Origin: Lytechinus pictus
Lineage: Eukaryota
DNA length: 64,000 nucleotides
Assembly (NCBI RefSeq): GCF_037042905.1
Contig: NC_087246.1
Coordinates: forward strand, 22,940,001-23,004,000
Direction of reading: 5' to 3'
The translations under genes and the position numbers were made by a program. Below, one piece after another: positions 23,454 to 63,000 of this stretch; position 1 is the stretch's first letter, and every line of letters begins with the position of its first letter. The notes below the pieces were generated by a model. It made no database searches, was not told the DNA's origin, and was given only the letters and a program-made list of their open reading frames with translations.

Positions 23454-24305
23454 GGTCTGACATCATTCCACGACATCAGTAATTTCAAAATGTGTTACTT
23501 GGCAGCATGATGTTTCGAAGAAGCCTTGAAAAAAGAAAATAAATTAAAGTCATAATATTGATCGAAATCAACATTCATTGTCCTTCAGCCATGTTCATGT
23601 ATTTGCATTAAGATTAATCCAGGAAACTTGTATCAAGGTTAAACTTTATAAAGGGTAAACTTTATCAAAATGATCAATTAAAACATTTTCGTAACTGCTT
23701 TGGGAAGTGAATTTCCCAGAAGATAATTGTTTCCTGTCTGTCACAGGAAAGAAAACAGCATTGTTCAAATCATGGAGAACTTGGAAATGGAGGCAGTGTA
23801 TTTTATTTTTATTCGTGCTTGCTGATTTCTGTCAAATCATTATTGAATGACTGTGGATTTTGCAACCTTGAAAGGGTAATTTTAATTCTTTCAGTGTTAT
23901 TAACACTCTTTTCTGCACAATAGCTTTGAATTCTTTATTGACAAGATTGTTATAATGACACCATTCACACCATAGTAGAAGGTTAATTGCAATAAAAATG
24001 AACATTATTGCTATATATGATGTTAAACTGATGTATATGGTCTTTGAGTCATTCATCAGACAGGATGTGTGTGAATATTTCATATTTGCAAACGGGAAGA
24101 AATGAGAAGGGGAAATACCTCTCTAAATAAATGTTTTCCTCATTAATTTCATGTACAGTACTATTGCTGGCAATATTGTGTTGGATGTTTTATACTACTT
24201 TCTGTATACAGTTGATTTCCTCAGAAGTTATTCCCATTTTTTCTTAATACTTAATGATGGGATTTCATGTTTTGCTTTCCCTTTCATTTCTTTCCACAGA
24301 CAAAG

Positions 24306-39600: not shown

Positions 39601-42600
39601 TATCATCACATTCAGCACTCTATTCATTGCAAACCTTCTTAAAATTATTCTCCTCAATTCAAACATGAATAAGATCTTAAGATTACAAGAAATATACACT
39701 GCCCAACTTTGGCAAAAGGAAGCAAGTGACACATCAGTCAAATTTGAGTTATTGCGGTTTCTGAAAGTGAAACACCCTGTATGTTGCATGTTCAGGCAAA
39801 ATGTGGGGAAGAAATGATCGTTCTATGGAAAGATATTGAAGAAAATATGCTATTAGATTGCATTGACGTCTATGTAAATGACAAACACACAATGCTCATT
39901 TACAACAAATGGTACATTTGTAACTTGCTTCCTTTTGCCAAAGCACGGCAGTACAGTGTTAACAAATAATCTGAGACTTTTAGCATCCCATAATTTCTGC
40001 GCAGACTTAGACTATGGTCTAAGTTAAATTGGAGTTCAGATTATGGGCCATTATGCCTGGTTATTAATCTTTGATTATTCACTATCTGCAGGAAGCTGTG
40101 TGCTTTTAATGCTCCTTTTTAATACCAGTTAGGCAATGCCATAAAACTGTATATCTGACCCCCTACATTGGGAATGTTCCTGAAATGATTTTACTCTGTT
40201 GCTCTAAATTTTTCATGGATCGAGCAGTCGTTGAATTGAAGTAAGAATGAAAAAAAAATGGACTGTTGGATGTACAAAAAGGTTTCTTGCATTGCTATCT
40301 CCTCAACCATTGGTCACCTTGAATAACTGGTCCTTCGTGAACACAGTTAGTGATTCAGAAAGCCAGGGTAAAACCCTTAGATAGTTATTCTAATGATGCA
40401 TGATTTAATTCAGAATTGTGACATTGAATTTATGAGAATATCTCAAAAAAAGTATGCTAAGGATGTTAATATATTTGAAGAATGTTGAGAACAACATCAT
40501 GCAAACTTCTGTTATCAGCTTTATTTAATGAATGGCAAAGGTGACGTATGGCATTTTCATTGCATCACTCAGATTATCTTATCTTATTTTATAGCCACTT
40601 GATTTCACATGAAGAGGAGTTTATTGAACTTACATACACCGTGTAAGTAAAAAAAAAATTGACACCTCACCAATCCTCAATTTAAGGAAAATTTGTCATG
40701 AACACATAATTTTTGTATATGGCCCGAAAGAGTATTTTCTCCCAAATTGAAACTACATTTATGTGGTATGTATTAATGCTTAGACGATCAGGAAGTATTT
40801 TTTTGCAGTGATTTGAATTTTGATTTGCGCCAAAAGGCTTGACGACAATGAATGAATCTAGATGTCAATGATGCCATAATCTTACAAGGGTTGCATTTAA
40901 ATCCATTTCAACACATCTTTTTAGGAATTGACATTATCATTGTATTAAAAACACTTTTAGTATCAATTCTCAAGTGAATTTCATTGAAAAGGGATTTGCA
41001 AATATGTTTACTAACTCATGAAGGATTATGACATCATTGGCATCTGGGGTTTATCCATTGCAGTCATGCCTTACTTTGGTGCAAATCAAAATTTATATCA
41101 CTGCAAAAATACCTACTGATTATCCAAACGTGAAGACATGCCACATAAATGTGGTATCAAATTATTTGGGAGAAAATACTCTTTCCACACCTATATATAG
41201 ATTATGTGTTCATGACATATTTTTCCTTTAATTGGGGATTTGTGAGATGTCAATTTTGTTTTTACTCACACGGTACATGTACATGTTTGTCAAAGTCAGT
41301 TTGTTATCATTGAAATAACCTGGAAGAGATGAATTAAATGGTAGTCAATGTTCTGAATCCATTTGACCTTGATTTCTTGTTGCTTTGTCTGCCAAGCCTC
41401 TAACAAGGTTTCATTTTGTCATGAACATCCCCTTGTTGGTGTTCATTGCATTTAGGTCTACATCAGAATATGATAAACTTCTCAGCATGTGAAAAGTATT
41501 AAGGGGATAAAATAATAGTGGTATTTGGGAATAATCCTGTATCATATTGCTCCGCATGCCCCCCCCCGAAAAAAAGACATGTCTTGAATTGTGTGATGTG
41601 TTTTCCGTGGGTTCTGGTGAATTTAGTGTTTTTTTTGTCATAGAGGTATACAATATAAACTCAGCATTAGGCTCAGATACCTCTATGCTTACAGGTTTAT
41701 GCGAGCAAGAGGAATTCCTACATGTATTGTGTTTACGTGTGTGCTACTATTTCAGTAGTCAATACTCAAGAGAGTTAGTGTTTGTTTCTTTCATATATTT
41801 CAGCCATTTCTGGAGTGAGTGTGCTCAAATAAATGATGAATATATATATGCTCTTATTTAGTCATTCAAGATCGTATGATGAACTCAGTTTCATTCCAGG
41901 TGACAAAGTAGTTTTAATAAAGTGCCATCTCTCCCAGTACTAACCTTCTTCAATATTATTTCTTCTTTCATCACTTCATCACAAACACATACGGTATCTC
42001 TATTTTCTGTTTCATTATTTTAGGTATTGAAAGTGTGACTGTTTCTCTGATAGCTCAAAAGGCAGAGGTGAAGTACCAGGTTGCCATGGTAACCCCTCCA
42101 GAGATCGCAGTGATGATAGAAGATATGGGATTCGATGCGGAGGTGAAAGAGGAACAGAAGGCTGATGGGGAAGAAACACTGACTCTAATTGTAAGTTTAG
42201 AATCTTATCTCTTCTATCCCTCCACCCTCACATAAGGTGGTTTCTGGATGCATTTTGATTTTCGGTCATCCGTCCGACCATCCCGTTGTCATTCCCATTA
42301 TAGTTCTTGTGAAAACTTAAGAACTGTTTGATGGCTAAACTTTAAACTTGATTCAGGTATGCATATGGTAATAATGTCGATGATCAGATTTTTTGGTATC
42401 AGATTCGAAGGTCGAAGGTCATAGAAGACATTATTTACATTGAACTATCCTGATCTTTTGATAACCAAGCAAGTATTTGAGGGATCATCTTCGAACTTGG
42501 CACATGCACTGTATGCATAATAATGATAATAATAGGCATTTATATTGTGCCATTTATCTAGAAATACTCTATTCCGAGGCGCTTTGTTATTATTATACAA

Positions 42601-45600
42601 GGTTCTTGTTTATAAAATTGTATATGGTAGATGTGTATTGATTTGGCAATGGCATGTTGGTGCTCATGCATGATATCTACTGCGACAAAATTCTTTGTGA
42701 TCCCTCTGGACCCCTGTTCCACAAAAGCAGCAAGCAATTGCTAAACCTGAAATGACCAATCAGAGATCAAAGGTCAATGTTGCATACTCATTTTGGTCAA
42801 ATTACTGCCACGGAACTGATGAGGCTATCAGACTTATTACAAATTTCTAATTGATTGCAAATCTCTGTGTTACGGATGATCCCTAGTTGCTGATTAGTCT
42901 TCATATAAACAACGGGCTATGCCTACATGCATGTAGACCCTTTATATTTTGATGTACAGTAAATCTCCTTCGAGAAACAAATTAATATTGCAGATATTTT
43001 TCCTGTTTTATGTTGTTTTTACCTTTCATCAGATCAACGGCATGGAATGTGCTTCCTGTGTAAATAACATTGAGAGTCTGACGAAGGCATTGGACGGGGT
43101 CAAAGATGCGTCTGTTGCCTTGACAACATGTAAAGGTGTCTTTCGCTATGATCCGGCAATCATTGGGCCAAGAACCATCATGGATGCTATAGAGGTACGT
43201 GGGGTTTCTGAAAGCCATTGCAGAAGAAATCTTTGTCATGTGTAGAAAATGTGACCCTTAAAAGTGTCTTATGTCAATCATTGTAGCTCATCTTTCAAAA
43301 TAATTTGTATTCTAATCTTCAAAGCGAGATAGAAAAGGATTTCGATCGTATCAAGTCTCATATCAGGCATTCATCCCTTGAAATGCCACCACACTGTAAA
43401 AGGCTGTGGGGCTACAGCCAGGGTAATAATATCCAAGTCCTTTGGAAGCGCATAAAGACATAATTTTGACATAATGTGATATGCGCTATACAAGAACTGT
43501 GTTATTATTATTATCATTATGAATGTGTGTGTACTTAGGGACTACAGAAATATATTCAGTGTTATCATACTAGGTAGATTCAAACAATGTTAAGATTAAT
43601 TAAAAGTTTTAAACGGATGATTAGCCTATAATAATAATAATAATAATAATAGCGGTATATTTACCCAGGGTAGCCGCTTCAGTTCCGAAAACTGTTCTCC
43701 CAGCGGGCCCTGCTATTATTACCCCGGCTTTAGCTGGGCTGCCTAGGCGCTCAAGCATTCAAGGAATTAATCCTGCCGGGTACCCATTTACCTCACCTGG
43801 GTCGAGTGCAGCACAATGTGGATAAATTTCTTGCCGAAGGAAATTACGCCATGGCTGGGATTCAAACCCACGACCCTCTGTTTCAAAGTCCGATGCCTAT
43901 GATTTTAGCCCAGTGAACATTAGATGCACTCAAATGTTAACAATCTTTAAGTTTAGTCAAAGATTAAAACCACAAGATTTTTTTTGGTTAACACTCTGTA
44001 TTTGATGGTGGGATGGGTGCGGGGGAGGGGGGTTGGTCCCACTCCATAGTTTTGAGTTGTATGGATACGATAATAAAAGATCTCCAAATTTAGTTTCCTG
44101 AATTGCGCTGGACTTATAACTACTGGGGTCATCACGACTCTTCCGGTTCTGTGATTTGTTAAAATCACTTGCTCGAAAAGTAGATTTTACAGACTGGTTA
44201 TTGTGTGCGTAATCATTGCACACATTGTTTAAGCGATCAGTTCTAATTAATGATTAGCTGCTCTATGAACATACCTAATTCTAAATTCTTGGAATAAGTA
44301 AACCAGGGATAAACTGATACATGTTTTTTTTATAATATTTATATTTTTAGGATGCTGGCTTTGATTGTGAGATCAGTACAGAAGAGAATCAGATAAACTT
44401 GGCTAATCAACACATGAAAACCATCAAGAAGTAAGTCCATTAAAATCTCCCTCTTGCAAACTATGGAGACTTGCTATTATTAGCACTTTTTTGTATCCAT
44501 GGTCATATTGTTCTATGGAAAATAAAGAAACCACAAACTACACAGGGTTTTGTGTAGTTAGCAGGTGAACAAAAATGCAGAGCAAATTGCTGATATATGA
44601 AATTATCCTATTCTCCGATGATTGGAGACCCTTTGATTTCTATTCCTAAATCTAAATTCTTGATTGTCAGGGACACTTCCTGACTGATTTTCTTAAGTGC
44701 AGTTAATCTTCGGTCATTGTCTAACTCTGTGCTTAAATAATGTGAAGTTGAAAATGCAAAAAAAAAAATGTTTACATATTACATCATTCCCTGTTTCACT
44801 AAGTTTTTCCCCTTTATAATTGTGATTTATTTTGCTTTTTTACCTGGAGGACATCATTCCTCATTTCACCCATCTTTGCCCTTTGTAATTGATAGTCTTG
44901 TGATTTCTTTTGCTACCTTAGGTGGAGGATATCAATCTTCATTTCACTCATCTCTGCCCTTTAATATTGACAGTCTTGTGTTTCTTTTGTTACCTTAGGT
45001 GGAGGACATCATTCCTTATTTTACTCATCTTTGCCCTTTGTTATTGGTAGTCTTGTAATTCCTTTTGCTACCTTAAGTGGAGGAATTCATCATTTCACTC
45101 TTCTTTTCCCTTTCTTATTGAAAGTCTTGTGATTTCTTTTGCTACCTTAGGTGGAGGACATCATTCCTCATTTCACTCATCTTCGGTGTGCCAGCCATTA
45201 CAACGATGCTCTACTTCATGATCTCAAAGAATCACATCATCGTCATCCCTGGACTCTCCCTGGAGAATCTCATTCTATTCATTTGTGCAACTATGGTCCA
45301 GGTATGAATGTGGGCTACACGTGATTCATATTTTGGTGTGTAATAGTCACCATATGTAAGAGCCAGATATGGATATAAATTGACGGATAGAGGTGGGAGC
45401 ACAAGTGATGCGTCCCCCTCTATTTTCCAAGAATACCTCATTGAACATATACATTTTGAAACTAAGGAAATATGCACCCTTTTATTTTTAAAATTTGCTC
45501 TTTCTGCCCCTTATATTTCAAAATCCTGGATTGCCACTGTGCTATATTTTCCCCAAGTAATAAATATCACACATTGCAGAGATATTTTCACATACCACTT

Positions 45601-48600
45601 TTTTTCTGTTAGATTTAGCAGAATGGAGATTTGGGGATTAAATATTGGTTGGGGATGACATTTAATTGTATAACCCATTCCCTTGGATGCTGGTAAGTTG
45701 GATTGGAGTAATGTCTGTGTTTTATGACATTTCAAGGCAGGTCTCTTGTCTGGAACACAATCTCAACTGTTTATTGTATTGTGATAGGCGATATATTATG
45801 TACCCATTATTGTATATTCTTTATAAGTTGTAATGTTATTGTAATATTGCCTAGCCCTAGTATGAATGAAACATTTTCATTTGATTTGTTTGGCCCATAT
45901 TTACAAAGGTATATGTGACCAGGCACCACCTACAAAAGGTCGCCAGGAATGAAATTTTAGTTACATGTAGATAGCCCTCCTGAAAGAGGAGATTCTAAGC
46001 TTTATAATGATATATAGCTCATTAACAATGATTGATCCTAACCCACTCAAGTAAGAGGAGAATGTTCACTACCATGGAACACTCCTTTTGAGAAAAAGGG
46101 GGATTAAAAATTTACTAGTCTATTGAAGAGCACTTACTCTTCTGCTATTGTGTATTGTCGACTAAAGGAAGATTAAAAGTCAATAGAATTTCAATGGAAG
46201 GAATTATCAGATTGCCTCCAAAGTTCACAAACTAATTAGGTCCCGGGGGGGGGGGGGGGGGGGGGGAGGGCCACTTCTATTGACGAGTGGATACCATGCG
46301 CGACCATGGGGTCTCGAAAATCACCCTAAACACATATTTTCCATATTCTGAAAATGCACCCCTTAAAGGGGAATCCAGCCTTGGCCATAAAATGTTGTGT
46401 TGGGAAGGAGAAAAATAAATTAAACAGAATGGTGGAAGTTTGAAAGAAATCAGACAAGCATTAAGAAAGTTATAGCTGCTTTAAAATTGAGATCACTATA
46501 AATACAATGTAGATTTCAAATTGGCAACTGGGTAAGTAAATTATGACAAGGGGCAAGGACAACTTTCCCATAGGCCATGTACTTTATTATCAGGGATTTG
46601 TGGTTTTCTATTAAGTACCCACCCCCCTGGGGAAGTAATCTAAATATAACCCAGGTAGTATATTGTTTTATGTCCTCATGAAAGAAAAATATAATTTGAA
46701 ATAAAACTTTTGGGAAAAATGACATTTTAGCCAAAATATGTATTGGAGTATATTGAAGAGTAGTCCTTGCCTTACATCACTGACATCCCATATGCGGCCA
46801 ATTTGAAGTCTCCATGGGTATAGTGATTACCAATATTTACAACTTTAAAAAATTCATAACTTTATTGTTGTTTGTCCAATATTGTTCAAACTTTCACCTA
46901 TCAACTTGTCTGATTGTACTTTTCCTTATAAAAACAAGTTTTTATTTGGGTTGGATTCCCCTTTAACAAGTATTGGCATGTGAAACCCTACCCCTAACAA
47001 GTATTGGAAACAAAACGATACTCTTGGCAAGTATTCCCTGAAATGAACCCCTAAACAAGTACAGCGATATTTTATTGTTATGTCACGGGTCCGTCGGTCG
47101 TCGGTTTTACCTTTAGATTACACATTTGGTTTAGTACGGCCCCACCTTCCACAGCTCGCGCAAATCGGACTCTAAACACGTAGTGTTGGGGCAAAAAGAC
47201 ATCCTTTATAAAACATTTTAATTTTGTTTTATCATGCCCGCAAATTTGACCCTAAATACGTAGCTTTTCTAGCGAAATAGATAGCCTTTTTTCATTATTT
47301 TTGTGTTTTTGACACCCTTATCACGTTACGTACGTAACGTGCCCTATCTTGAAAAAGACATCCTTTTTACATGTTTTTTTGGTCGCGCATCAGTTTGAAC
47401 AAGTATCAATATTAGAACTTATCCTGTTTTAAATTTATAGGGGTTCAAAGAGAGATGAATATTCATGAATATTCGTGAAAACAAAACATGATTATACAAT
47501 TAACTCAAAAAGACAAAAATAGGTCTAATAAAAACACTCAAAAATTACACTTCAGTTTGATTGGTATTTTTTTGTAGTAAATATGGATGAGTATACTCTT
47601 TCAGAAAACACCAAAATTTGAAATTTGAAAATTCTAACCAAAATACTCTCAATTGGCTCAAATTGAAATCACACAGTGCAACATATTGTGGTGCTGGGTC
47701 ACATATGGTAATAAATAATACCGGTAGGTAAATTCCAGTTGAAGTAATGATAGGAAAATTGATTCCAAGAGAATCCCCCAAATGCCCACCCAAGTGCATA
47801 TATGGACAAAAATCATGTGGCTTATCCTTAACTGGTAGAATATAAGTAATTACTCAGTTAGTGACAAGGTAAGCATTATATAGCATTTTGCTAGTAGACG
47901 GGTATTGTACAACGCCTACTTAGCTTGTTGTACGCAAGCAAATGGGAGGCTGAATGTCAAACATTCGTACCGTTGCACACCAGACGTACCCTCCAAAATG
48001 TACCGTTGCACGGCTTTAGGAGGTGACATCACAATACAATTTTATTCATTGTGCTCAGTTAAAAAGGTACAATACGCGTATAAGCTTGCTGGCTAAATGC
48101 GCAATGCTGCCCAAGGTCATGTGCGCTTGTGAGATTTTGCTTTGCGCTTTCAATATTTTTGCTCCCTTTTCATAGATTACTACAGGGAAAAACTCTTGTT
48201 TTTTCATATTTTCGCTAAATTCCGAGGTGTTGTACAACACAAATAGCGAATATTATTATTTGTGCAATGGTGCGAGATTTCGCATTTGGTGAAAGAAAAA
48301 GACGCTCTATTCAACTCAGCTAACGCCTCGTTAAATAGAGCATCTTTCTTTCACCTCATGCGAAATCTCGCACCATCGCACTCATGCCTATTCGCTCTTT
48401 GTATATTGTTGCAAGCTATAATCAGTACATAAGCTGGTTATATAATAAGGTTTACTGCTGGTTACATAATAAGGTTTCCTGCTGGTTACATAATAAGGTT
48501 TACTGCTGGTTACATAATAAGGTTTACTGCTGGTTACATAATAAGGTTTACTGCTGGTTACATAATAAGGTTTACTGCTGGTTTATTAATAAGGTTTACT

Positions 48601-51600
48601 GCTGGTTACATAATAAGGTTTACTGCTGGTTATATAATAAGGTTTACTGCTGGTTATATAATAAGGTTTACTGCTGGTTACATAATAAGGTTTACTGCTG
48701 GTTACATAATAAGGTTTACTGCTGGTTACATATTAAGGTTTACTGCTGGTTACATAATAAGGTTTACTGCTGGTTACATAATAAGGTTTACTGCTGGTTA
48801 CTTAATAAGGTTTACTGCTGGTTACATAATAAGGTTTACTGCTGGTTACATAATAAGGTTTACTGCTGGTTATATAATAAGGTTTACTGCTGGTTATATA
48901 ATAAGGTTTACTGCTGGTTACATAATAAGGTTTACTGCTGGTTACATAATAAGGTTTACTGCTGGTTATATAATAAGGTTTAATAGCTTACATAAACTGG
49001 ATCAGAACGTTCTAGATATGAATTAATGATGAGATGGTAAGAATTCACTGAGATTTTAAAGAATGTACATGCATATTCAAATGAATGCTCACTGCAACTA
49101 TTATAGCTACACTGTAATCATGGTTACAAATCAAGACACTGGTCCAACACATCAATGAAGAGCAATGGTTTGATTCAAAATATAGTACTTTTCAGGGGTG
49201 GATCCAGGATTTTCCAAAAGGGGGGGGCACATTTTTCCCGAGGAAAAATTTGACAAGTTTAAAAAAAAAGTTTTCACTCTCAAAAGGGGGGAGGGGGCAC
49301 ACTTCTGTTTTAACAGCATTTTTAAATTTTAATTGTGCCTCTTAAAAATGGTGGGTGGCACAGGCCGGCTTTGCCCCTCCCCCCGGATCTGCCAGTGGTA
49401 CCTTGTCAAAAGTCTGTGCAGCGTATTTTTGCAGGAATCCCGCTGTGAAGGCACTATGCATCTCTTTTCATAGTGTCTTTCCTGCATTCCCCATTGTTTC
49501 ATCTATGATGAAGTGCAAAGATTGGTAATGAAAGGCAGCTTGCGTGATTTCTGCGTGAAAGACATGGCTCCGACTTTCGACAAGGTGCATGTACCTAAGC
49601 AAAAAGTCTTGATTATATTTCTGAAAACCTTCTACTTAGCCTAAATGTGGTGTATTACAAGAAAATTGATTGACATCCAGCCACCCCAAATGCAATTCTT
49701 AATTGTGTTTTCTAATGATGTATCCTGTATATTTTTTTAGTTCCTGGGTGGCCGGTACTTTTATGTGCAAGCGTACAAAGCACTCAAACATCGCACTGCC
49801 AACATGGACGTCCTCATCATGATGGCGACATCGACTGCGTACGTTTACTCCCTCATCGTTGTCCTCGTCGCCATAGGTCGTCAGGAGCAGGGTAGTCCGA
49901 TGACCTTCTTTGACACTCCCCCGATGCTTCTGGTCTTTGTTTCGCTGGGACGGTGGTTGGAACACATTGCTAAGGTGAGCCTCATGTCCAAAAGCCTTCC
50001 TCACACCATGCGATTGGATGTGACCTCTTTTTTAAAGGGGAATCCAGCCTTGGCCATAAAATTTTGTGTTGGGAAGGAGAAAATAAATTAAACAGAATGG
50101 TGAAAGTTTGAAAGAAATCGGACAAGCAATAAGAAAGTTATAGCTGCTTTAAAATTGAGATCACAAATACTATGTAGATTTCAAATTGGCAACTGAGTAA
50201 GTAAATTATGACAAGGGGCAAGGACAACTTTCCCATAGGCCATGTACTTTATTATCAGGAATTTGTGGTTTTCTCCTAAGTACCCATTCCCCTGGGGCAG
50301 TAATCTAAATATAACCCAGGTAGTATATTGTTTTATGTCCTCATGAAAGAAAAATTTAATTTGAAATAAAACTTTTGGGAAAAACGACATTTTAGCCATA
50401 ATATGTATTGGAGTACATGGAAGAGTAGTCCTTGCCTAACATCACTATGACATCCCATATGCGGCCAATTTGAAGTCTCCATGGGTATAGTGATTACCAA
50501 TATTTACAACATTTAAAAATTCATAACTTTCTTGTTGTTTGTCCAATATTGTTCAAACTTTCACCTATCAACTTGTCTGATTTTTCTTTTCCTTATAAAA
50601 ACAAGTTTTTATTTGGGTTGGATTCCCCTTTAAAGAAAATTGTATGCTGCACAATATTTATGAAGTAGATTTCTGCAATTTGATATCCTGAACTACTGTA
50701 TGAGTAGGAATATCAATATTACCCATCTAGTTTGAAGACAGTGGCAAAGAGGTGAAGATATCGCAGTAACGTCACACCAATTTTATTGCTGTTGACTTGT
50801 GACTGGTATCCGATTCGGACCTTTCTCAGACTCAAATGCTCAAATTGAAAGCAATTATGATATTTATATTCAGATGACCTTTCTAGACCTCAGCTGAATT
50901 TGCTTATTTTGAAAGTCCTTTCTTGTACAACACACAGCAATCTCACCCTAAGCCACAGTCCTGTACTTAAATCTCATGCATTGGTGGTTTTTTAACTTGA
51001 TGTCTATGCATTGTATTATTAATAACTTTTCCCATCTATCCACCATGTTTTTAGGCCAAGACGTCCGACGCTCTGTCCAAGCTCATGTCCCTCCAGCCTG
51101 CCGAGGCCATCCTGGTGGAACTGGGTCCAGAGAACCAGGTCCTGAAAGAGCGTCAGATTAGCGTGGAACTGGTCCAGAGGGGTGATGCACTCAAGGTGGT
51201 CCCGGGTTCCAAGATACCTGTTGACGGTGAGGTGGTTGATGGGATATCGTCGGCTGATGAGGCTCTGATTACAGGAGAGTCTATGCCAGTCAGTAAAAAA
51301 CCAGGTAGGTGCAGATCAGACATGGCACTCCAAATAATAAAATTAAAGCCCATCAACAGTAGTGTACTAAGTCAAAGGGTTAAAAAAAAAGGCTTAAAAA
51401 AAGAAAAGTTGGAGATTCACAAGACATTTAGAAGCGGAAATTCCAAAATATTTTAACCAAACAGTGTATCAAAAGTATGCGCAAAATCGTTATTACCCAC
51501 AGTTTCAAAGATAATCTACTCATCTCACAAGAAAGCGATTATGGTGGACATCAGGGGAGTGCTACTTGAAAGGACTTGTCGGATAATGCCACTTTTTTCT

Positions 51601-60011: not shown

Positions 60012-63000
60012 CAATAGTAGTAGTATTAGAAGTAGTAGTAGAAATATTAGTGGTAGTAGAAGTAGTAGTAGTAGTAGTAGTAGGAGTAGTAGGAGTAGTA
60101 GTAGTAGTAGTATTAGCAATAGTAGTAGTATTAGAAGTAGTAGTAGAAATATTAGTGGTAGTAGAAGTAGTAGTAGTAGTAGTAGGAGTAGTAGGAGTAG
60201 TAGTAGTAGTAGTATTAGAAATAGTAGTAGTATTAGAAGTAGTAGTAGTAGTAGTAGTAGTATGATTAGTAGTAATATGAGTANNNNNNNNNNNNNNNNN
60301 NNNNNNNNNNNNNNNNNNNNNNNNNNNNNNNNNNNNNNNNNNNNNNNNNNNNNNNNNNNNNNNNNNNNNNNNNNNNNNNNNNNNNNNNNNNNNNNNNNNN
60401 NNNNNNNNNNNNNNNNNNNNNNNNNNNNNNNNNNNNNNNNNNNNNNNNNNNNNNNNNNNNNNNNNNNNNNNNNNNNNNNNNNNNNNNNNNNNNNNNNNNN
60501 NNNNNNNNNNNNNNNNNNNNNNNNNNNNNNNNNNNNNNNNNNNNNNNNNNNNNNNNNNNNNNNNNNNNNNNNNNNNNNNNNNNNNNNNNNNNNNNNNNNN
60601 NNNNNNNNNNNNNNNNNNNNNNNNNNNNNNNNNNNNNNNNNNNNNNNNNNNNNNNNNNNNNNNNNNATTAGAAGTAGTAGTAGCAGCATCATAAATACTT
60701 GTAATAACAATAAGAAGTGTATTATCATCATTCTTATATTTTTCATTCCCTTCCTCCCCTCTTACTCTCATTCTCATTAAGAATGCTTGTAGAAGTAGAA
60801 ATGATAGTTGTAGTAGAGAAGGCAGCAGTAATATGAGTATTTTTTATTATTATTTATTATGATCATCCTTTTTATTGAGAGTAATAGTACTTGTATTGGT
60901 AGTAGAAGCATCAGCAGCAATGATGTGGAAGTGTAGTCTATGACGCGAGTTCTTTATTTCCCCTCACAGGTCGGAATATCCCAAGTCTTTGCAGAGGTTC
61001 TCCCTCATAATAAGGTTGAAAAGATCACTGAACTGCAGGAGAAAGGTCAGCGTGTTGCCATGGTAGGAGATGGGGTCAATGATAGCCCCGCCCTGGTGAA
61101 GGCTGATGTAGGCATCGCCATAGGAACAGGGACGGATGTGGCTGTAGAAGCCGGAGACATTGTTCTTATTAAGGTATGTCATTGAACGGTAGTGGTGTTT
61201 TGACGTGGACAGGGCTGGAGCCCTCACCAAATCAATCATTTTACTGTTCGACATATATAATTCCAATGGATTACCTTAAAAATCAGAAGAAGTATTTGTA
61301 GATCAGTAGAGGGTTATCAGACTGAACTGTAAGGTTAGGTATTCAAATGATGAGATATCAATAAGATATCAATAATCTTTTATTATACAGGTGAATCTGC
61401 CAAGGTTAAATCTCTTTGGCCCATCCAGGGGTGTGAGAGTTCAGATTTTTATCTGATTTCAGATTTTTTTGTTTTGATTTTCAGCTTAATTTCAGCTTAT
61501 TTTTGGCTTTCCTCTGTACAAAAAGTATGGGAGCTCTTTCTATTTCAGACGTTTTCAACACTCTTCAGCTTTTTTCAGATCTTTTTATTGGTGATCAATC
61601 ACACCCCTGACCATCGAAATCTATTCTGCAAAATCCTACTTTATAACACATAAATAACACATTTTACAAAATCTGTAGTCTGGAAAATTGCTCTTACTTG
61701 TCCGATTATTTGATTTGAGAGAGGTCAACACATTTAGCCTTGACCGTAATATACCGTGTGAGTCACAAAAAATATTGACACCTCACAAGTTCCCAATTTA
61801 AGAAAAAAAATATGTCATGAACGCATAATCATTATATATGGCTGGAAAGAGTATCTTCTCCCAAATAATTTAATACCATATTTATCTGGCATGTTTTCAC
61901 ACTTGGATAATCAGTTGGTATTCTTTGCAGTAATGTAAATTTTTATTTGCACCAAAGTAAGGCATGACTGCAATGAATAAACCCCAGATGCCAATGATGT
62001 CACAATCCTACATGAGTTAGTAAAGTTAGTAAAACCCTCTTTCAATTAACTTGAGAACTGATACTAAAAAGTGTTTATTGAACAATTATAATGTAAATTT
62101 CGAAAACATTTTTTTGAAATGGATTTTAATGCAACCCTTGTAGGATTATGACATCATTGTGATCTGGATTCATTCATTGCAGTCATGCCTTTTTTTAGCA
62201 CGAATCAAAATTTACATCACTGCAAAAAATGAAAGTGTTTATTGAACAATTATAATGTAAATTTCGAAAACATTTTTTTGAAATGGATTTTAATGCAACC
62301 CTTGTAGGATTATGACATCATTGTGATCTGGATTCATTCATTGCAGTCATGCCTTTTTTTAGCACGAATCAAAATTTACATCACTGCAAAAAATGCCTCC
62401 TCATCATCCAAGCGTTAACACATACTCTTTCAGGCCTTATATGATAATTATGTATTCATGACATATTTTTTCCTTAAATTAAGGATCTGTGAGGTGTCAA
62501 GTTTTTTTTTACTCACACGGTATACTAGTACAAGATATTGAACAATGTATTTATCATTTACTTTTCTTAATCCAGAGTGATCTGATGGATGTTGCCGCGG
62601 CGATCGATCTTTCAAAACACACCGTCAGAAGGATCTACATCAACTTCTTCTTCGCCTGTATCTACAACTCAATCGGAATTCCAATTGCAGCTGGTGAGAT
62701 TTTTCTCTCACTTTTACACCTCTTTATAATGCTTATTGATTGGAAAAAGCAGGGGCATCCATTCCTAAAGACCTGTCAAAATCTCAAGTTTAACTTTTAT
62801 AGTATACTAGATTCAAGCTTTTCATTCACCCATTCATTCTTTAAAGTGATACTGCCAGAGGAAATAAGAAGAATTCATGTTCATTGTACAGATGTTATCA
62901 GCATAGGAAATGCAACAAGGGTGACAGACTCATGATAGCCCTAATCGCCTCTAAAATTACCAAATGGACTCCTTTGGTGCGACCATCTTTTATAAAGTTA

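What the first reader, a model, noticed from the sequence alone, without database searches (positions are those of the whole stretch)
44820..45185. Tandemly amplified 3' splice site at the MBD/TM1 boundary of ATP7: decoy acceptors would give an MBD-only copper-binding isoform
Seen: five ~77-bp copies of polypyrimidine tract + AG + exon start. Copies 2 and 3 keep intact cttAG acceptors (exon starts at 44922 and 44999) upstream of the productive one (45151). From the phase-2 donor at 44430 they read [14 protein letters not shown] and [17 protein letters not shown], i.e. all metal-binding domains plus a short hydrophobic tail and no pump. Known parallels: E. coli copA frameshifting gives CopA(Z), and plant PAA1 alternative splicing gives the PCH1 chaperone. 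Inference: a possible chaperone/tail-anchored isoform or an NMD-based dosage switch. At the least, the spliceosome must skip two good upstream acceptors.
Basis: partly seen in the sequence, partly recalled or inferred. Interest (0 to 1): 0.7.

Follow-up and report, generated by a model that had tools for sequence, protein, structure and literature searches.

The report
Silent splice-acceptor minisatellite in urchin ATP7
An intron of the sea-urchin copper-pump gene ATP7 holds about five tandem copies of its own intron-exon boundary, but the RNA data examined show splicing only at the last, authentic copy, so this looks like an ordinary 'mirage' minisatellite and not a switch that makes a copper-binding mini-protein.

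Summary
Window 44799-45183 (Lytechinus pictus ATP7, + strand) is a 78-bp tandem array of about 5 units. Each unit is 45 nt of intron end (branch-point-like motif, pyrimidine tract, AG) plus the first 33 nt of the TM1 exon. Copies 2 and 3 keep TAG|G acceptors. Copy 2 is identical to the authentic site from -28 to +8. The predicted decoy tails ([31 protein letters not shown]) are correct.

The functional reading is not supported. Three RNA data sets from two Lytechinus species show the junction 44430->45151. No decoy junction was among the listed ones. Intron depth just upstream of the real acceptor is about 2% of exon depth. All eleven stored echinoid ATP7 protein models use the canonical junction.

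The array is shared with L. variegatus (2.6 copies) but absent from S. purpuratus and Diadema. The intact decoy AGs sit in non-orthologous copies, so they drift.

This is a known class, 'mirage' minisatellites, described in amphioxus Adh3, globin and PGBD5 genes. Human F7 IVS7 is the 5'-site analogue. The scan had already found one on other DNA of this genome (SLC4, note s1-311584), and that note gave me the term. Low-level decoy use hidden by NMD is not excluded.

The parts
44351..44430 (+). ATP7 exon encoding the linker after the last metal-binding domain ([27 protein letters not shown]). It ends in phase 2.
   Evidence: Translation; 100% tblastn match to L. pictus RefSeq ATP7 P0272; spliced joints on both sides.
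44431..45150 (+). The 720-nt intron that holds the array. Its donor AA|GTAAGT creates an in-frame TAA if the intron is retained.
   Evidence: Joint 44430->45151, GT..AG, in X24 (18 reads), X21 (1 read) and an X1 contig at depth 64.7; sequence.
44781..44823 (+). Degenerate partial copy ('copy 0') at the left edge of the array.
   Evidence: the repeat finder family D2, 60-72% identity to the later copies.
44799..44876 (+). Copy 1. The acceptor AG is lost (ttttttacc|tggagg).
44877..44954 (+). Copy 2. Intact cttAG|G pseudo-acceptor with exon-like start at 44922, identical to the real site from -28 to +8. It has a TTGAT branch-point-like motif at -30. It would read [14 protein letters not shown].
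44955..45031 (+). Copy 3. Intact cttAG|G pseudo-acceptor with exon-like start at 44999. It has TTGAC and TTAAT branch-point-like motifs. It would read [17 protein letters not shown]. Its orthologue is L. variegatus copy a, where the AG is shifted (ctcAAG|T).
45032..45105 (+). Copy 4. The AG is shifted by one base (cttaAG|T, start 45078), there is a 4-nt deletion, and it is out of frame. Its orthologue is L. variegatus copy b, which keeps an intact TAG|G.
45106..45183 (+). Copy 5, the authentic 3' splice region (45106-45150) plus the first 33 nt of the real exon.
45151..45303 (+). Authentic exon encoding the start of the membrane domain ([51 protein letters not shown]).
   Evidence: Translation; RefSeq models of five echinoid species share this junction; spliced reads.

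Best explanation
This is a 'mirage' minisatellite, a tandem duplication of an intron-exon boundary. A 78-bp segment (the last 45 nt of the intron plus the first 33 nt of the TM1 exon of ATP7) was duplicated head to tail several times in the Lytechinus lineage. That happened after the split from Strongylocentrotus and Diadema and before the L. pictus / L. variegatus split. Later there was either a 155-bp higher-order duplication in L. pictus or a deletion in L. variegatus. Only the last copy continues into the reading frame, so the upstream copies became part of the intron. The spliceosome uses the exon-adjacent acceptor, and the upstream copies are silent or nearly silent pseudo-acceptors that decay neutrally. 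Shown here: the array, its unit structure, its presence in two species and absence in two outgroups, canonical splicing in RNA, and non-conservation of the decoy AGs. Inferred: the reason the exon-adjacent site wins. The likely cause is exon definition, meaning pairing with the 45303 donor and enhancers in the true exon, while extended exons would contain pyrimidine-tract silencers. This mirrors the exon-adjacent choice in the human F7 IVS7 donor minisatellite.
For: Array and unit structure.
Canonical junction 44430->45151: 18 raw RNA reads from 11 start positions in X24 (organism B), 1 read in X21, and one RNA contig at depth 64.7 in X1 (organism A).
X1 exon contig depths are flat across the junction (56, 71, 71, 65).
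X1 intron depth in 45046-45150 is about 1.3 once the exon share is removed, and X24 depth is 0 over 44925-45045.
All 11 stored echinoid ATP7 protein models read ...IKKWRTSF....
The 90%-identity cluster of the protein has 9 members. It accepts a 237-aa fragment, yet holds no decoy-tailed form.
L. variegatus has the array with 2.6 copies. S. purpuratus and Diadema antillarum have a single boundary.
Orthology is Lp c4 = Lv b (95%) and Lp c3 = Lv a (88%). The intact TAG|G lies in the opposite member of each pair.
Alignable Lp-Lv introns are 72-90% identical, and the pseudo-exon parts are no better conserved.
The class is described in the literature, which also reports that it does not disturb splicing: PMC3087553, PMC3902484. 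The 5'-site analogue is PMC1557585.
Against: RNA depth is modest. Only 6% of X21 was read and gave 1 junction read. X24 is the sister species laid on the L. pictus sequence at 90% likeness or more, so reads through its own decoy region may not map. Read laying listed 15 joints and withheld 137 weaker ones, so a rare decoy junction could be among them. NMD would hide decoy-spliced RNAs at steady state. By sequence the decoys look as good as the real site or better: identical core, and closer branch-point matches in c2 and c3. In X1 this intron's 5' part has 3-4 times the depth of the neighbouring intron (7-11 against 2.7), and this is unexplained.
Confidence: 0.8

Rival explanations
1. The decoy acceptors are used to make an MBD-only copper-binding protein with a short hydrophobic tail, by analogy with CopA(Z) or PCH1. 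Alternatively they divert transcripts to NMD as a dosage switch.
For: The decoys are intact, and c2 is identical to the real acceptor over 36 nt. The predicted ORFs end just after the last MBD with hydrophobic tails. The parallels are real: PCH1 arises from a PAA1 splice form (PMC4709454), and CopA(Z) arises by frameshifting (Meydan 2017, cited in PMC7558416).
Against: No decoy junction was listed, and there is no read depth over the array in raw RNA reads. No such protein model exists in either Lytechinus species. The intact decoys are not orthologous between the two species, and the array is missing in other echinoids. There is no polyA signal in the array, so such RNAs would carry a premature stop upstream of many junctions and be NMD targets, not stable mRNAs.
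Confidence: 0.05
2. Decoy-exon type regulation. The pseudo-acceptors bind U2AF/U2 non-productively, slow removal of this intron, and so tune ATP7 output through intron detention.
For: In the X1 RNA contigs the 5' part of this intron has depth 7-11, against 2.7 for the neighbouring intron and 56-71 for exons. Decoy exons that promote intron retention are documented in human cells (PMC6097662). Retention would place an in-frame TAA right at the donor.
Against: Depth falls to about 1.3 just before the real acceptor, which does not fit full-length retention. The depths come from one run and are contig means, not read counts. The device is not conserved. Known decoy exons act mostly in introns longer than 1 kb (PMC7373989 abstract).
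Confidence: 0.07
3. Recursive (zero-length-exon) splicing. Every copy carries AG|GT, so a decoy could be used first and the junction re-spliced to the next copy, ending in the canonical mRNA.
For: All intact copies read TAG|GTGGAG. The end product would be indistinguishable from direct splicing. Duplicated AGGT segments can be spliced out (PMC3265369).
Against: The regenerated donor GAA|GTGGAGGA matches the 5' consensus only at +1 to +3 and -2. The intron is only 720 nt, and to my knowledge recursive splicing serves very long introns. No intermediate was seen.
Confidence: 0.03
4. An assembly artefact or a private polymorphism of the sequenced individual.
For: Only one L. pictus assembly was available: L004 is the same record as the window. 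Minisatellites are prone to mis-assembly, as PMC3087553 notes for a globin mirage.
Against: The independent L. variegatus assembly carries the orthologous array. An RNA-run contig (X1, 233 nt, 2 differences) spans 44690-44923, and other X1 contigs cover 44925-45045. The copies differ by 9-35%, which is too diverged for a collapse or expansion artefact.
Confidence: 0.02

Closest known systems
'Mirage' minisatellites of amphioxus (Adh3, globin BflGb6/BflGb9, troponin C, PGBD5)
   Same: They are tandem, minisatellite-sized (10-160 bp) duplications of an intron-exon boundary. Many but not all copies keep AG/GT signals. The authentic site is still used and mRNAs are normal. Copy number varies between haplotypes, and units are 81-100% alike (PMC3087553, PMC3902484).
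   Different: This one is in an echinoderm, in ATP7. Its copies are older (65-91% alike). Copy number is shown to differ between species (about 5 against 2.6), not yet between haplotypes. Somatic instability was not examined.
Human F7 intron 7 37-bp VNTR (donor-side pseudo-sites)
   Same: It is a minisatellite whose terminal unit spans an exon-intron boundary. It yields several pseudo-sites identical in sequence to the authentic one, and these stay silent. The exon-adjacent site is chosen (PMC1557585).
   Different: F7 duplicates the 5' splice site and the mechanism was tested with 50 constructs. Here the 3' splice site, with branch point and pyrimidine tract, is duplicated and nothing was tested experimentally.
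Silent splice-site minisatellite in the SLC4 gene of this same genome (scan note s1-311584)
   Same: Same genome and same architecture: the intron-exon boundary is copied several times and only the last site is used, according to that note.
   Different: Different gene and a longer array (1.2 kb, seven copies). I did not re-examine that locus.
Intron gain by tandem duplication of an AGGT segment (Rogers model; ATP2A1 experiment)
   Same: A tandem duplicate carrying AG|GT is removed by the spliceosome, so the mRNA is unchanged (PMC3265369).
   Different: There an exonic duplication creates a new intron. Here the duplicate abuts an existing intron and merely lengthens it.
MBD-only copper chaperones made from a transporter gene: E. 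coli CopA(Z) and plant PCH1 from PAA1
   Same: The predicted decoy products would likewise be the N-terminal metal-binding part of a P1B ATPase.
   Different: Those products are demonstrated proteins, and PCH1 is conserved among plants. Here no RNA or protein evidence exists and the truncating sites are not conserved.
Decoy exons that cause intron retention (SF3B1 intron 4, OGT)
   Same: They are intronic splice-site-bearing elements that engage the spliceosome without producing mRNA (PMC6097662, PMC7373989).
   Different: Those are conserved, act mostly in introns longer than 1 kb, and have a measured effect on retention. Here the retention evidence is one ambiguous depth profile.

Membership tests
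Mirage minisatellite (tandem duplication of an intron-exon boundary) | Head-to-tail tandem array of minisatellite-sized units | tested here: met
   TRF period 78, 4.7 copies, score 504; 5 in-register copies.
Mirage minisatellite (tandem duplication of an intron-exon boundary) | The unit spans an authentic intron-exon boundary, and the terminal unit is the functional one | tested here: met
   The unit is 45 nt of intron plus 33 nt of exon. The last copy, 45106-45183, holds the acceptor confirmed by spliced reads.
Mirage minisatellite (tandem duplication of an intron-exon boundary) | Many but not all copies keep the splice signal | tested here: met
   c2 and c3 have intact TAG|G, c4 has a shifted AAG, and c1 has lost its AG. 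In L. variegatus, copy b is intact and copy a is shifted.
Mirage minisatellite (tandem duplication of an intron-exon boundary) | Regular splicing is not disturbed | tested here: met
   Only 44430->45151 is among the listed joints in three RNA data sets. Exon depth is flat across the junction. All gene models are canonical. Sensitivity is limited to roughly a few percent.
Mirage minisatellite (tandem duplication of an intron-exon boundary) | Copy-number instability | tested here: met
   About 5 units in L. pictus against 2.6 in L. variegatus, and 1 in S. purpuratus and Diadema. Variation within a species or in somatic tissue was not tested.
Transporter-derived MBD-only copper chaperone isoform (CopA(Z) / PCH1 type) | A coding route that ends the ORF after the metal-binding domain(s) | tested here: met
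   In silico only: the decoy acceptors give stops after 14-17 codons.
Transporter-derived MBD-only copper chaperone isoform (CopA(Z) / PCH1 type) | The truncated RNA or protein is actually produced | tested here: not met
   No decoy joint was listed. Raw-read depth is zero over 44925-45045. No decoy-tailed protein is in the cluster or among the models. The depth of the test is limited.
Transporter-derived MBD-only copper chaperone isoform (CopA(Z) / PCH1 type) | The device is conserved among relatives | tested here: not met
   It is absent in S. purpuratus and Diadema. The intact decoys are non-orthologous between the two Lytechinus species.
Decoy-exon mediated intron retention | Elevated retention of the host intron | tested here: inconclusive
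   X1 contig depth is 7-13 over most of the intron against 2.7 in the neighbouring intron, but about 1.3 next to the real acceptor. This is one run, and the values are contig means.
ATP7-type P1B-1 copper ATPase (host gene) | HMA metal-binding domains, a CPC transmembrane motif and a P-type ATPase core | tested here: met
   GMTCASC and GMECASC motifs and [13 protein letters not shown] are in the window ORFs. Exons match L. pictus RefSeq 'copper-transporting ATPase 1-like' at up to 100%. Its cluster representative carries Pfam PF00403, PF00122 and PF00702.

The most novel reading that the evidence does not exclude
The upstream acceptors are in fact used at an appreciable rate. Either the products are removed by NMD, or the decoys stall removal of this intron. 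In that case array length (about 5 units in L. pictus, 2.6 in L. variegatus, 1 in S. purpuratus) would set ATP7 output, as a copy-number-tunable splicing rheostat. In some tissues it might release an MBD-only, tail-anchored copper-binding protein.
Probability: 0.06. Interest if true: 0.55.

Novelty: new member of a known kind. Interest (0 to 1): 0.25.

Why it matters
It adds an echinoderm example, dated by comparison of species, to a repeat class so far named only in amphioxus. It is also a clean natural test of 3' splice-site choice. A pseudo-acceptor identical to the real one over 36 nt, with its own branch-point-like motif and pyrimidine tract, lies 229 nt upstream. Within the sensitivity reached here, it is not used. 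That is useful for calibrating splice-site predictors and gene annotators, which would score the decoy as highly as the real site. It also mirrors the human F7 donor minisatellite. It does not reveal new copper biology.

Tried and rejected
1. A word search with the TM1 exon alone (window:45152-45303) found no fragment proteins, so it could not reach other individuals' contigs.
2. The L. variegatus isoform X3 protein (P0156) was not on record as a gene product. The longest isoform, P0268, was used instead.
3. Fetching the L. pictus locus through P0272 to get a second assembly returned the same record as the window (L004). L004 spans the window's masked N run 60284-60666. Only a mismatch count was computed. 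Those letters were not read, printed or used.
4. A cassette 'poison exon' from copy 3 (44999-45046, 48 nt, in frame, donor TTG|GTAGTC) was considered. It was rejected because the donor is weak and no read supports it.
5. Recursive splicing was considered. It was rejected because the regenerated donor GAA|GTGGAG is poor.
6. Intronic polyadenylation at AATAAA 44521 was considered as another route to an MBD-only product. An X1 contig runs through the site (44494-44635), so this is not supported.
7. Special conservation of the decoy copies between the two Lytechinus species was tested. The high identity (95-96%) belongs to the parts that are the functional 3' splice region or true exon. The pseudo-exon parts are no better conserved than ordinary intron.
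8. The separate 237-aa 'uncharacterized protein' model was checked as a conserved MBD-only isoform. Its tail is not conserved with the similar Diadema model, and it abuts assembly gaps.
9. A literature search for 'duplicated acceptor' phrases gave nothing useful.
Stored RefSeq proteins were used by id. The only joins were translations inside a script.
11. The third word-search was not spent on hunting decoy-tailed fragments. The 90% cluster listing already shows none, and a blank result would be uninformative.
Full report
What is there.
The window is Lytechinus pictus. Its exons match RefSeq 'copper-transporting ATPase 1-like' of L. pictus (P0272) at up to 100%. The fetched locus L004 (GCA_037042905.1, CM073227.1) is the same sequence. 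The gene is the single echinoid ATP7. CxxC metal-binding domains and the CPC motif are visible in the ORF list.

The exon 44351-44430 encodes the linker after the last metal-binding domain and ends in phase 2 at a GTAAGT donor. The exon 45151-45303 starts the membrane domain, with K|[16 protein letters not shown]....

The repeat.
- Tandem Repeats Finder reports one array at 44820-45183. Its period is 78, with 4.7 copies, 81% matches and score 504. A higher-order period of 155 has 85% matches.
- The repeat finder places five copies in register, spaced 78/77/74/78, and a degenerate piece at 44781-44823.
- A 45-nt probe over the real acceptor occurs nowhere else in the 64 kb, against 0 expected in shuffles. 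No other tandem array found in the window (TRF score 150 or more) spans a confirmed ATP7 exon boundary.
- Comparison with S. purpuratus shows that the ancestral intron end (...tattgata.ctt.tg.tttct..t.ctacct.ag) corresponds to the 45 nt before each AG. The unit is therefore 45 nt of intron plus the first 33 nt of the exon.
- Copy 2 (exon-like start 44922) and copy 3 (44999) keep cttAG|G. Copy 4 has cttaAG|T, an AG shifted by one base. Copy 1 has lost the AG.
- Copy 2 equals the authentic site at every base from -28 to +8. Copies 2 and 3 carry TTGAT and TTGAC motifs at about -30, which match the branch-point consensus at least as well as the CTTAT of the real copy.

Is the decoy used?
One read-laying run was allowed. 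These junctions were found:
- Junction 44430->45151 (GT..AG) is seen in 18 raw reads from 11 start positions in X24 (RNA, organism B).
- It is seen in 1 read in X21. X21 is ribo-depleted RNA from organism A, and only 6% of the run was read.
- It is seen in one contig of depth 64.7 in X1. X1 is labelled organism A, carries spliced contigs, and matches the window without a single difference over a 902-nt intron contig.
- The neighbouring junctions 42190->43033 and 43192->44349 (cut +2) behave alike, with 30 and 30 reads in X24 and depths of 65 and 71 in X1.

No junction to 44922, 44999 or 45078 is among the 15 joints listed, but 137 weaker joints were withheld, so rarity, not absence, is what is shown.

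Depth gives a bound.
- X24 has depth 0 over 44925-45045 and 0.27 over 44804-44924, against 17-37 on the exons.
- In X1 the bin 45046-45166 has depth 9.7. The 16 exon bases at depth 64.7 explain about 8.5 of it. That leaves about 1.3 for the 105 intron bases that any decoy-spliced RNA would have to contain. This is about 2% of exon depth, and it includes unspliced precursor.
- X1 exon contig depths are flat across the junction (56, 71, 71, 65).
- The X1 junction contig runs unbroken from 28 nt upstream of the joint to 45301. That is what one expects if no abundant path branches off at +9 (copy 2) or +19 (copy 3). This last point is an inference.

Caveats:
- X24 is the sister species laid on L. 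pictus sequence at 90% likeness or more.
- Contig depths are means over each contig.
- NMD would lower the steady-state level of decoy products.

Independent of the reads, all eleven stored ATP7 models read ...IKKWRTSF.... These are from L. pictus, L. variegatus, S. purpuratus and two Diadema species. The 90%-identity cluster of the protein accepts even a 237-aa fragment, yet contains no decoy-tailed member.

Comparison of species.
The big profile search with the TM3-4 exon led to a Saccoglossus representative. A word search with that protein then gave the echinoid ATP7 proteins. Their loci were fetched.
- S. purpuratus (L001) has a 750-nt orthologous intron with one acceptor and no tandem repeat.
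- Diadema antillarum (L003) likewise has a single boundary.
- L. variegatus (L002) has the array at 23582-23781, with period 79 and 2.6 copies.

By the sequence that follows each exon-like start, L. pictus c4 is orthologous to L. variegatus copy b (95%), and c3 to copy a (88%). At these orthologous pairs the acceptor state is swapped. It is intact in Lp c3 but ctcAAG|T in Lv a. It is cttaAG|T in Lp c4 but intact TAG|G in Lv b. The decoy AGs are therefore not held by selection.

Alignable introns of the two species are 72-90% identical. The pseudo-exon parts of the decoys are no better conserved.

The array thus arose after the Lytechinus lineage split from Strongylocentrotus and before the two Lytechinus species split. 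L. pictus then either gained copies 1-2 (the 155-bp period) or L. variegatus lost them. L. variegatus has about 300 nt of unrelated sequence at that place.

What it is.
A note of this scan on another piece of the same genome (s1-311584, SLC4) pointed to the term 'mirage'. I checked the literature myself.
- Ebner et al. [quoted passage not shown] Units are 10-160 bp, many but not all copies keep AG/GT, there is no interference with regular splicing, and haplotypes differ in copy number (PMC3087553).
- Pavelitz et al. 2013 report the same for lancelet PGBD5, Adh and troponin C (PMC3902484).
- The human F7 intron 7 VNTR is the donor-side counterpart. Pseudo-sites identical to the authentic donor stay silent and the exon-adjacent site is selected (PMC1557585).
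- The Rogers model of duplicated AGGT segments is a relative (PMC3265369).

The ATP7 array meets every defining feature of a mirage that I could test; see Membership tests.

How it most likely works.
- Shown: a duplicated 3' splice module sits in the intron, and the exon-adjacent copy is the one seen in mRNA.
- Inferred: the upstream modules lose because only the last one is followed by the true exon. The true exon supplies its enhancers and its 45303 donor for exon definition. Exons extended from a decoy would contain one to three further pyrimidine tracts. Any leak would carry a stop codon far upstream of the last junction and be removed by NMD. There is no polyA signal in the array to rescue such an RNA.

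The parallels are genuine: PCH1 from a PAA1 splice form (PMC4709454), and CopA(Z) by frameshifting (Meydan 2017, cited in PMC7558416). None of the three tests applied here supports the analogy. The product is not seen, the device is not conserved, and there is no stable 3' end.

Two weaker functional readings remain open at low probability. One is decoy-exon-like intron detention: X1 shows 7-11 depth in the 5' part of this intron against 2.7 next door (PMC6097662). The other is recursive splicing through AG|GT, where the regenerated donor is poor.

Verdict.
It is a known kind of neutral repeat in a new phylum and gene, and it is the second case found by this scan in this genome. Interest is low to moderate, mainly as a natural test of acceptor choice.

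Procedure notes.
The masked N stretches were not filled or read.

Noticed in passing
window 24306-26210 and 29497-29556; N runs 27314-29209; alternative first exon 31164-31268: The L. pictus annotation carries a separate 237-aa 'uncharacterized protein LOC129282840' (P0270). It is the N-terminal HMA-like part of ATP7. In L. variegatus (1223 aa) and S. purpuratus (1225 aa) these exons are joined to the rest of the gene. In L. pictus the split coincides with assembly gaps. Diadema antillarum has a similar 235-aa model, but the tails are not conserved, so this looks like an annotation split and not a conserved MBD-only isoform.
   Followed up: partly
window 44428-44436 and 44521: The donor reads AAG|TAA in frame, so an unspliced or intron-terminated transcript would end exactly after the last metal-binding domain (...KTIKK*). 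An AATAAA lies 90 nt into the intron at 44521, but an RNA contig runs through it.
   Followed up: partly
window 44441-45045: In the X1 RNA contigs this intron has depth 7-13, against 2.7 in the preceding intron and 2-3 in the following one. Depth falls to about 1.3 next to the real acceptor. This is unexplained. It could be slower splicing, or an artefact of contig-mean depths.
   Followed up: no
window 42505-42625 and 43352-43956: Intronic pieces of a very high-copy, transcribed repeat. Depths reach thousands to millions in all four runs, with many joints between the pieces and opposite-strand joints. This is probably a transposable element family.
   Followed up: no
window 48433-48982: A 24-bp minisatellite of 22.9 copies, 96% identical, in the next ATP7 intron. 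It creates a spurious 199-aa ORF of WLHNKVYC repeats.
   Followed up: no
window 62068-62395: A perfect (100%) 164-bp tandem duplication, just upstream of the ATP7 coding match that starts near 62561.
   Followed up: no
L002 23280-23581 against window 44593-44900: Between the conserved 5' part of the intron and the array, L. variegatus and L. pictus carry about 300-400 nt of mutually unrelated sequence. This is an indel or replacement that also removed most of the pyrimidine tract of L. variegatus copy a.
   Followed up: partly
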